Under the pieces are notes generated by a model. The model was not told the origin of the DNA and did no database searches. It saw nothing but the letters and a program-made list of their open reading frames with translations. A DNA stretch of 64,000 nucleotides, from assembly GCA_053919585.1 (NCBI GenBank), contig CM132787.1; one strand, 5' to 3'. The translations under genes and the position numbers were made by a program. The stretch is from Euprymna scolopes. Taxonomy: Eukaryota. Positions 20,740 through 21,001 of this stretch are shown one piece after another (within the stretch, counting starts at the first letter, position 1; the number at the start of each line of letters is the position of its first letter).

Positions 20740-21001
20740 TACTTCATTTACTCACATAAAATTAATATACAAAAGTATAAATTTATGCGTAAACTTTAAG
20801 TATTTACTTCAAAAGTGCTCAATACGTAGGTAGAGCTAGTTAGTAAATTATAAAATATATATGGCGATTAACCTACATTGAATATTCCGCGTTTCATCCA
20901 CTCTAGGATTCTTTAGGCTGATGAATAAGCCTGAAGAATCCTAGAGTGGATGAAACGCAGAATATTCAGTGTAGCTTAATCGCCATATATATTTTATGAA
21001 T

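What the first reader, a model, noticed from the sequence alone, without database searches (positions are those of the whole stretch)
20926..20978. Complete type I hammerhead with a palindromic stem III apex in a Naiad-type pLTR family
Seen in the sequence: all HHR elements are present (stem I TAAGC/GCTTA, CUGAAGA, stem II, GAAA, GUA cleavage site). Stem III is longer than the minimal PLE form and is capped by the self-complementary GAATATTC. Copies: intact at 20926-20978 (+) and 54802-54854 (-); mutated at ~20868-20918 (-) and ~56368-56420 (-). Stem II varies ATCC/GTCC against GGAT, which preserves pairing. Established: PLE HHRs with palindromic loop III are thought to cleave as dimers. Inference: an active ribozyme that processes this element's RNA.
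Basis: partly seen in the sequence, partly recalled or inferred. Interest (0 to 1): 0.7.

Follow-up and report, generated by a model that had tools for sequence, protein, structure and literature searches.

The report
Hammerhead ribozyme of a Penelope retroelement
The sequence is a complete hammerhead self-cutting RNA motif at the 3' end of a very abundant Penelope-like jumping gene of a mollusc genome, a known association; the copy pointed at is a dead, mirror-image insertion, and the element is of the Hydra type, not the Naiad type.

Summary
Window 20926-20978 (+) and 54802-54854 (-) carry every hammerhead core nucleotide, three helices and a GUA cut site. The copies at 20868-20918 (-) and 56368-56420 (-) have lost core bases.

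It is not chance. My descriptor finds 2 hits in the window against 0.01 per shuffle. The genome (5.9 Gb) holds about 72,900 copies of the core pattern.

The family label is wrong. The motif lies about 400 nt after the stop codon of an ORF ordered RT, then a CxCX5C linker, then a C-terminal GIY-YIG nuclease, and 32 to about 160 nt before the end of (TA)n-targeted insertions. Those are the marks of the Hydra clade of Penelope-like elements, where canonical hammerheads are already reported. Naiads have an N-terminal nuclease.

Subfamilies differ inside the ribozyme only at tolerated positions: N7, 10.1 (A-U or G.U), loop II and one helix III mismatch. Helix III is an 18-nt near-palindrome. The hairpin is weak (-2 kcal/mol), and two molecules are predicted to fold into a double hammerhead.

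Cleavage is not shown. No Rfam hammerhead model matches, and polyA RNA-seq shows no ends at the cut. The 20926 copy sits in a -98 kcal/mol palindrome. This scan has met the kind many times in this genome.

The parts
20926..20978 (+). Intact type I hammerhead motif, right arm of a head-to-head insertion. Predicted cut between 20973 and 20974.
   Evidence: Read; descriptor hit; monomer hammerhead fold -8.7 against an MFE of -9.3 kcal/mol.
20979..21004 (+). Short tail of the right arm. The insertion ends here and (TA)n follows.
   Evidence: blast of the family unit to the window, query 115-194 on 20925-21004 at 95%.
20868..20920 (-). Degenerate hammerhead, left arm: G5>A, stem I broken, one helix III pair broken.
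20691..20867 (-). Long tail of the left arm. It includes the GCUC-N12-GAGCACU hairpin at 20814-20837.
   Evidence: query 114-346 on 20923-20691 at 93%; sequence.
20860..20990 (.). Near-perfect palindrome formed by the two arms. It is flanked by (TA)n at about 20700-20740 and 21008-21100.
   Evidence: Fold of -98.2 kcal/mol, z = -20.6. The Rfam miRNA-hairpin look-alikes reflect this hairpin.
54802..54854 (-). Intact hammerhead motif with native flanks. Predicted cut between 54807 and 54806. A possible outer stem I (GCG/CGC across a 2x2 internal loop) spans 54794-54862.
54776..55526 (-). 5'-truncated copy of the Penelope-like element: C-terminal part of the GIY-YIG nuclease, stop codon, about 400 nt of 3' UTR, hammerhead, short tail.
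   Evidence: 29 genomic copies match positions 1-751 at 81-89%. The consensus translates to the nuclease C-terminus.
55296..55526 (-). Remnant coding for the C-terminal part of the GIY-YIG nuclease (CxxC..E..N..CxH region).
   Evidence: ORF lists; alignment A1; Pfam GIY-YIG.
56368..56420 (-). Dead hammerhead (A6>C, G8>A, G12>U) in a second truncated copy at about 56342-57064.
31785..31947 (-). Family copy whose homology begins within 2 nt of the predicted cut site. It is the subject of another finding.
   Evidence: query 162-324, where G1.1 is query position 164.

Best explanation
The motif is the hammerhead ribozyme carried in the 3' UTR (pseudo-LTR region) of a young, very abundant Penelope-like retrotransposon with a C-terminal GIY-YIG endonuclease, most probably of the Hydra clade. 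It lies about 400 nt after the stop codon. It also lies 32 nt (short tail) or about 160 nt (long tail) before the point where inserted copies end in (TA)n.

In transcripts that hold two copies, the 18-nt near-palindromic helix III strands of two ribozymes pair with each other. This builds a double hammerhead that cuts after GUA. It would release RNA with a 5'-OH at G1.1 and a 2',3'-cyclic phosphate.

Shown here:
- the motif itself and its copy number;
- its place in the element;
- the pattern of allowed variation;
- the predicted preference for the dimer.

Inferred, not shown:
- catalysis;
- that cleavage happens in vivo;
- what cleavage does for transposition.

The window copies themselves are dead-on-arrival, 5'-truncated insertions. 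The one at 20926 would be sequestered in a long hairpin if it were transcribed.
For: - All core positions and three helices are present. Chance expectation is 0.01 per window. The genome holds 72,900 copies, with none for the reversed control.
- Upstream ORF order is RT (FxxD, YRDD), then CxCX5C, then GIY-YIG, then the stop. Pfam GIY-YIG scores 22.3 bits, E = 1.6e-4, and matches 4 of 15 aligned members. ESM Atlas neighbours are RVT_1 and GIY-YIG clusters.
- RT-bearing copies are 92-95% identical to the query RT fragment, with open frames up to 766 aa.
- In 60 flank-anchored copies, the only sites inside the 53 nt with a second allele at 10% or more are N7, 10.1, loop II position 4 and the helix III mismatch. 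The 43 nt upstream hold about 14 such sites.
- In the 52 of those copies that have no indel, 97.4% of pair cells are paired. Core variability is 3.8%, against 54% at N7.
- The helix III hairpin is only -2.0 to -2.4 kcal/mol. Its duplex is -15.4 to -16.2. The two-molecule MFE is exactly the double hammerhead (-28.8 and -29.0), whereas the one-molecule MFE is a misfold.
- Head-to-head junctions centred on AAG|CTT fit arms that start at G1.1. They number 488 loci, against 61 and 97 at two nearby palindromes and 4 and 1 for the blunt junctions beside it.
- Literature: hammerheads lie in the pLTRs of canonical PLEs and are thought to work as dimers (PMC4209133). Canonical hammerheads are readily detected in the Hydra clade, which inserts in (TA)n (PMC8557442). 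A Poseidon hammerhead cleaves in vitro (PMC11167929).
Against: - No Rfam hammerhead model matches, even at E <= 10 on a 101-nt slice.
- The usual G10.1-C11.1 pair is replaced by A-U or G.U.
- There are no compensatory double changes, so helix support rests on conservation and on where variation falls.
- The tail just 3' of the ribozyme is equally invariant. The constraint could therefore be recognition by the reverse transcriptase rather than catalysis.
- PolyA RNA-seq from three runs shows depth of about 950 running evenly across the cut on both strands, and no place where a fifth of molecules begin or end.
- A plain scan of 5' truncation points shows no peak at the cut: 385 at +1, of which 45% are explained by snap-back through stem I, against 264 at -1 and 197 at +2.
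- The AAG|CTT excess could partly reflect the AGCT palindrome, or the amplification of one hairpin lineage.
- Cleavage at this site would separate the ORF from its own copying tail.
- In vitro, a Poseidon element needs no cleavage to insert (PMC11167929).
Confidence: 0.65

Rival explanations
1. The hammerhead-shaped block and the tail are kept because they form the 3'-end structure that the element's reverse transcriptase or endonuclease recognises. Self-cleavage is vestigial, or plays no part in transposition in vivo.
For: - The tail from +6 to +32 is as invariant across subfamilies as the ribozyme.
- Copies end 32 nt past the cut, just before a conserved GCUC-N12-GAGC hairpin.
- RNA-seq shows no ends at the cut.
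- Poseidon hammerhead mutants insert normally in vitro, and no RNA-seq ends were seen there either (PMC11167929).
Against: - Variation is confined to N7, a wobble-preserving 10.1 change, loop II and one mismatch, while all nine invariant core bases stay fixed in every subfamily. That pattern is what catalysis demands, and a mere protein-binding hairpin does not.
- Junctions consistent with a 5' end at G1.1 are in excess.
Confidence: 0.25
2. The ribozyme works as a monomer, because its helix III (4 bp, a mismatch, then 2-3 bp) is long enough. The palindromic apex is incidental.
For: - Helix III is much longer than the 0-2 bp of minimal PLE hammerheads (PMC4209133).
- The monomer hammerhead fold is within 0.6 to 3.2 kcal/mol of the MFE.
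Against: - The hairpin is worth only -2.0 to -2.4 kcal/mol.
- The monomer MFE is a misfold that pairs CUGAA of the core with UUCAG of helix III.
- The hammerhead-compatible ensemble fraction is 0.2-18%.
- The dimer gains 11.4 kcal/mol in helix III.
- Helix III has no unpaired loop bases at all, which is the mark of a duplex-former.
Confidence: 0.15
3. The element is a Naiad-type Penelope-like element.
For: - (TA)n targets, high copy number and inverted insertions are shared with Naiads (PMC8557442).
Against: - The nuclease follows the RT in the same ORF.
- The nuclease is the last coding part retained in 5'-truncated copies.
- Naiads have an N-terminal nuclease and lack canonical hammerheads, and in cephalopods they survive only as old remnants (PMC8557442).
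Confidence: 0.03
4. The palindrome at 20860-20990 is a hairpin RNA gene (a miRNA or siRNA precursor), and the hammerhead likeness is secondary.
For: - The hairpin is very stable.
- There are sub-threshold Rfam matches to miRNA precursor models at 42-45 bits, against gathering scores of 90-118.
Against: - Those matches only reflect a long perfect hairpin.
- 6,793 loci share the same kind of head-to-head junction, which is the known insertion scar of Penelope-like elements (PMC8557442).
- No small-RNA data were examined.
Confidence: 0.04

Closest known systems
Hammerheads of Hydra-clade Penelope-like elements (Craig et al. 2021, PMC8557442)
   Same: C-terminal GIY-YIG; CxCX5C linker; CxxC and CxH around the conserved E and N; divergent RT4; insertion in (TA)n; canonical hammerhead present; molluscs are among the hosts.
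   Different: Clade membership rests on motifs read here, not on a tree. The published Hydra hammerhead sequences (their supplementary file S2) were not compared. The copy number here is far higher than the 'small number of families' reported.
Minimal hammerheads in pLTRs of metazoan PLEs (Cervera and De la Pena 2014, PMC4209133)
   Same: Type I; located in the terminal repeat region; massive copy number; inverted pairs 100-700 bp apart; palindromic helix III and loop 3; proposed action as dimers.
   Different: - Helix III here is an 18-nt near-palindrome instead of 0-2 bp.
- Helix II is 4 bp instead of 6-8 bp.
- There is no extra base between positions 9 and 10.1.
- Position 10.1-11.1 is A-U or G.U instead of G-C.
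Canonical metazoan type I hammerheads of satellite DNAs and non-LTR retrozymes (PMC7229834; bioRxiv 10.64898/2026.07.22.740005)
   Same: Helix I of about 6 bp and helix II of 4 bp; palindromic top of helix III; dimer logic; link to PLE pLTRs.
   Different: Here the motif sits in an autonomous, ORF-bearing element and its 5'-truncated copies, not in short ORF-less tandem repeats. No circular RNA was sought.
Poseidon hammerhead of Anolis carolinensis (Frangieh et al. 2024, PMC11167929)
   Same: A PLE hammerhead next to the 'tail' where reverse transcription starts. RNA-seq shows no ends at the cut in either case.
   Different: There the ribozyme overlaps the ORF start and was shown to cleave in vitro. 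Here it follows the ORF and is untested.

Membership tests
Hammerhead ribozyme, type I | Core C3 U4 G5 A6 N7 G8 A9 and G12 A13 A14 | tested here: met
   Read. The core is kept in all subfamilies.
Hammerhead ribozyme, type I | A15.1-U16.1 pair and a cleavage-site base H17 that is not G | tested here: met
   GUA, with A17 at 20973 and 54807. Variability at position 17 is 1.9%.
Hammerhead ribozyme, type I | Three helices round the core, helix I open, helices II and III closed | tested here: met
   Helix I is 5 bp, plus a possible 3 bp beyond a 2x2 loop. Helix II is 4 bp with a 6-nt loop. Helix III is 4 bp, a mismatch, then 2-4 bp.
Hammerhead ribozyme, type I | G10.1-C11.1 pair, which is usual but not absolute | tested here: not met
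   A-U in 33 and G.U in 17 of 52 copies.
Hammerhead ribozyme, type I | Match to an Rfam hammerhead covariance model | tested here: not met
   No hammerhead family is listed at gathering score or at E <= 10. The long helix III and the unusual 10.1-11.1 pair may cost score, but this is not proven.
Hammerhead ribozyme, type I | Helices supported by compensatory changes | tested here: inconclusive
   97.4% of cells are paired, but essentially the only change is the one-sided A/G at 10.1. Genomic copies are neutral relics.
Hammerhead ribozyme, type I | Site-specific self-cleavage | not testable with these tools
   The only indirect data are the absence of RNA-seq ends at the cut and the excess of AAG|CTT junctions.
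Penelope-like element, Hydra clade | Single ORF with an RT followed by a C-terminal GIY-YIG nuclease | tested here: met
   L057 and L059 read RT, linker, nuclease, stop. Pfam GIY-YIG scores 22.3 bits against a cut-off of 22.6. Atlas neighbours agree. Pfam finds no RT domain.
Penelope-like element, Hydra clade | [quoted passage not shown] | tested here: met
   Alignment A1 and the translations against the description in PMC8557442, section 11.
Penelope-like element, Hydra clade | Insertion into (TA)n, inverted 5'-truncated partner copies, a tail | tested here: met
Penelope-like element, Hydra clade | RT groups with Hydra in a phylogeny; DKT and RWK motifs | not tested
   No reference sequences were on hand.
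Penelope-like element, Hydra clade | Pseudo-LTRs: direct repeats flanking the ORF | not tested
   No full-length locus could be fetched.
Penelope-like element, Naiad clade | N-terminal GIY-YIG joined to a C-terminal RT by a CxC domain | tested here: not met
   The nuclease is downstream of the RT, and it is the last coding part in 5'-truncated copies.
Non-LTR retrozyme | Short ORF-less tandem repeats, each with a hammerhead, expressed as circular RNA | tested here: inconclusive
   The two direct copies in the window are 1,566 nt apart and only 87% alike. They are truncated ORF-bearing copies. Circular RNA was not examined.

The most novel reading that the evidence does not exclude
The family's hammerhead is an obligate double hammerhead: an 18-nt fully palindromic helix III with one always-kept mismatch. 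On this reading, the roughly 490 head-to-head insertions joined at AAG|CTT are genomic fossils of RNA cut at G1.1 in vivo and then reverse transcribed. That would be the first in vivo record that a Penelope-like element's ribozyme cleaves the RNA that goes on to be copied.
Probability: 0.2. Interest if true: 0.55.

Novelty: new member of a known kind. Interest (0 to 1): 0.22.

Why it matters
Hammerheads in Penelope-like elements are well documented, so the motif itself adds little.

Three points have some use:
- The clade label is corrected to Hydra-type, not Naiad-type. This matters because Naiads are reported to lack canonical hammerheads.
- The family is large and young (about 73,000 motifs, with open frames up to 766 aa). 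Its ribozyme is predicted to fold correctly only as a dimer, which makes it a clean substrate for the unsettled question of whether PLE hammerheads cleave in vivo, and why.
- The junction counts offer a cheap genomic proxy for that question.

Tried and rejected
- **Rfam.** Searches at gathering score and at E <= 10 gave no hammerhead hit. The only hits were miRNA-hairpin look-alikes caused by the palindrome.
- **Pfam on ORF pieces at E <= 0.1.** Nothing useful was found. GIY-YIG appeared only when the aligned members were scanned at E <= 1.
- **PDB sequence searches.** The nuclease profile and the RT piece gave nothing meaningful.
- **Scan of 5' truncation points with three non-consensus bases upstream.** It is confounded by microhomology classes: CAG|GCTTA from snap-back through stem I, small deletions, and the phase of the (TA)n flank. 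It shows no clean peak at the cut.
- **Neptune/Nematis assignment.** I first read the linker that way. I dropped it after reading the Hydra description.
- **A blast with a microsatellite-bearing query.** It gave mostly (TA)n noise.

Full report
**Observation.**
The 53 nt at window 20926-20978 (+) read, in hammerhead order:
- helix I 5' strand UAAGC;
- core CUGAAGA;
- helix II AUCC/GGAU with loop UAGAGU;
- core GAAA, whose last A is 15.1;
- helix III strand CGCAGAAUAUUCAGUG;
- U16.1 and A17;
- helix I 3' strand GCUUA.

The predicted cut is between 20973 and 20974. The copy at 54802-54854 (-) is intact too. It has G at 10.1 (G.U with U11.1) and G instead of A at the helix III mismatch.

The copy at 20868-20918 (-) has G5>A, a broken helix I and a broken helix III pair. 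The copy at 56368-56420 (-) has A6>C, G8>A and G12>U.

A descriptor of my own asks for the core, at least 4 bp in helix I, at least 3 bp in helix II, a closed helix III, and U followed by a non-G base. It finds just the two intact copies in the window, against 0.01 hits per shuffled window.

**What surrounds it.**
The stretch 20860-20990 is a near-perfect palindrome of two head-to-head copies. The predicted fold is -98.2 kcal/mol, z = -20.6. It lies in a (TA)n microsatellite.
- The left arm carries a long tail reaching 20691.
- The right arm carries a short tail reaching 21004.

The Rfam matches to miRNA precursors, all below their gathering scores, only reflect this hairpin.

The copy at 54802 lies at the 3' end of a 751-nt unit, 54776-55526 (-). 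That unit recurs full-length at 81-89% identity in 29 other fetched places of the genome.

**The element.**
The consensus of those copies and longer copies (L057 and L059) give one reading direction:
1. RT motifs: FIQFD..FYPSI, a divergent motif 4, and YRDDGL.
2. An Asn-rich stretch of variable length.
3. A C-x-C-x5-C linker.
4. A GIY-YIG domain (VVYQA .. YYVGMT .. FKTRYYDH) with CxxC before the conserved E and CxH after the conserved N.
5. The stop codon.
6. About 400 nt of untranslated sequence.
7. The hammerhead.
8. The tail.

Support for the domain calls:
- Pfam gives GIY-YIG at 22.3 bits (cut-off 22.6, E = 1.6e-4). It matches 4 of 15 aligned homologues.
- The nearest ESM Atlas clusters are RVT_1-bearing and GIY-YIG-bearing.

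5'-truncated copies keep the nuclease C-terminus. No stop codon or ribozyme lies between the RT and the nuclease. The nuclease is therefore C-terminal.

Craig et al. 2021 (PMC8557442) define Naiads by an N-terminal nuclease. They state that Naiads lack canonical hammerheads and survive only as old remnants in cephalopods. The same paper describes the Hydra clade as follows:
- short elements;
- a C-terminal nuclease;
- a CxCX5C linker;
- CxxC and CxH around the conserved E and N, in place of CCHH;
- a divergent RT4;
- (TA)n targets;
- hosts that include molluscs;
- canonical hammerheads readily detected.

Every feature I could read fits Hydra. No tree was made, so I call it probable Hydra. 'Naiad-type' is not supported.

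**Abundance and age.**
- The 26-nt core pattern, with N at three positions and up to 2 mismatches, occurs 72,900 times in the 5.9-Gb genome. The reversed control occurs 0 times.
- An RT fragment finds 17,293 first-look candidates. The 150 that were scored are 92-95% identical to the query, with open frames up to 766 aa.

The family is therefore young.

**Is the ribozyme shape under constraint?**
Inserted copies decay neutrally. The informative signal is what differs between subfamilies, that is, between lineages that stayed active.

I took copies anchored only on 10 + 11 nt outside the motif (17,062 hits; the first 100 are listed). I fetched 60 independent ones.
- Inside the 53 nt, a second allele reaches 10% at only four sites: N7 (all four bases occur), 10.1 (A or G against U), the fourth base of loop II, and the 5' base of the helix III mismatch (G, C or A opposite A).
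- The 43 nt just upstream hold about 14 such sites.

In the 52 of those copies without an indel, the share of copies that differ from the consensus is:

| Position class | Variability |
|---|---|
| helix I | 2.5% |
| nine core bases | 3.8% |
| helix III | 2.5% |
| N7 | 54% |
| helix III mismatch | 30% |

In the same copies, 97.4% of pair cells are paired.

This is the pattern a working hammerhead allows. There are two reservations:
- There are no real compensatory double changes.
- The tail from +6 to +32 is just as invariant. Part of the constraint may therefore serve recognition by the reverse transcriptase.

**Monomer or dimer.**
- As one molecule, the hammerhead fold costs -8.7 or -8.8 kcal/mol.
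- The one-molecule MFE is -9.3 or -12.0 kcal/mol. It pairs CUGAA of the core with UUCAG of helix III.
- The helix III hairpin alone is worth -2.0 to -2.4 kcal/mol. The same strand as a duplex with a second copy is worth -15.4 to -16.2.
- The MFE of two molecules is exactly the double hammerhead, at -28.8 and -29.0.

Helix III has no unpaired loop bases. It is an 18-nt near-palindrome with one mismatch, and no subfamily has closed that mismatch.

It matches what is proposed for metazoan type I and PLE hammerheads (PMC4209133).

**Evidence on cleavage in vivo.**
I laid three polyA RNA-seq runs and one single-cell run of the same species on 54700-55075.
- About 1,300-1,500 family reads per polyA run were laid.
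- Both orientations are about equally represented.
- Depth is 565/393 and 549/388 in the bins on either side of the cut.
- No place was found where a fifth of molecules begin or end.

This looks like passive read-through transcription of dispersed copies, and it shows no strong cleavage. It is weak evidence against activity, for two reasons. The cut 5' fragments would be lost from polyA RNA. The same negative result was reported for a Poseidon hammerhead that does cleave in vitro (PMC11167929).

**Genomic junctions.**

| Head-to-head junction | Loci |
|---|---|
| centred on TTATGCGCATAA, a few nt 5' of helix I | 6,793 |
| centred on AAG\|CTT | 488 |
| blunt at +1 | 4 |
| blunt at -1 | 1 |
| TTAA palindrome, 3 nt downstream | 61 |
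| 8-nt palindrome GAATATTC, 12 nt upstream | 97 |

The first row is the dominant scar. The AAG|CTT junction is the form expected if a cDNA copied up to an RNA 5' end at G1.1 and paired with a second such end through its terminal GC. It also fits ends at -1 (through AGCT) or at +2 (blunt).

The excess at the cut site is suggestive. It is not proof, because the loci may not be independent, and annealing strength differs between sites. A plainer scan of truncation points gave no clear peak.

**Mechanistic caveat.**
Copies end 32 nt past the cut, just before a GCUC-N12-GAGCACU hairpin (20814-20837 on the minus strand). Other notes of this scan take that hairpin for the reverse-transcription start signal.

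A cut at this ribozyme would therefore detach the ORF from its own start signal. Either uncut, longer-than-unit RNA is the template, as in PMC11167929, or the cut RNA is religated into a circle, as proposed in PMC4209133. Neither was tested.

**Verdict.**
- The motif is a real and complete hammerhead, but an ordinary one for its setting: the 3' region of a Penelope-like element.
- The kind is known, and this scan has noted it many times in this genome.
- The label 'Naiad-type' should be replaced by 'probably Hydra clade'.
- The two intact window copies are relics. The one at 20926 could not fold as a ribozyme inside its palindrome.
- Activity of the family's source copies, as dimers, is plausible but unproven.

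**Limits.**
- As a result, no full-length copy, no upstream pLTR and no cross-species comparison could be examined.

Noticed in passing
genome-wide; window example 20860-20990: About 6,800 loci carry two hammerheads head to head, joined at exactly the same palindrome, TTATGCGCATAA, a few nt 5' of helix I. Either the template RNA has a fixed 5' end there, or this hairpin form is itself copied as a unit.
   Followed up: partly
genome-wide: Head-to-head junctions centred on AAG|CTT are consistent with arms that start at the predicted cut. They number 488 loci, five to eight times more than junctions at two nearby palindromes.
   Followed up: partly
window 54808 (table 7): Up to 200 RNA-seq reads in one run share one junction form: the inverted tail runs up to about the cut site and is joined to a forward tail that starts near +15. 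This is probably one highly expressed locus elsewhere in the genome.
   Followed up: no
window 20814-20837 (-); same motif in L002, L004, L005 and others: The long tail holds a GCUC-N12-GAGCACU hairpin just past the point where short-tailed copies end. Other notes of this scan report the same signal in unrelated element families.
   Followed up: partly
L057:1144-1300 and other copies: Between the RT and the nuclease the ORF holds an Asn-rich run from an AAT-type repeat. Its length differs between copies, and it is where frames shift in broken copies.
   Followed up: no
window 4947-6579 (+): Two adjoining open frames of 194 and 278 aa look like a hAT/DUF4371-type transposase-derived gene, judged from memory only.
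   Followed up: no
window about 26100-27500, 36170-36560 and 37800-38150: These are masked or gap stretches, 2,014 N in all.
   Followed up: no
L001:2464-3024 (-) and L008:2198-2722 (+): Unrelated repeats lie beside family copies: a LINE-type RT fragment and a mariner-like transposase fragment. Both were judged by eye.
   Followed up: no
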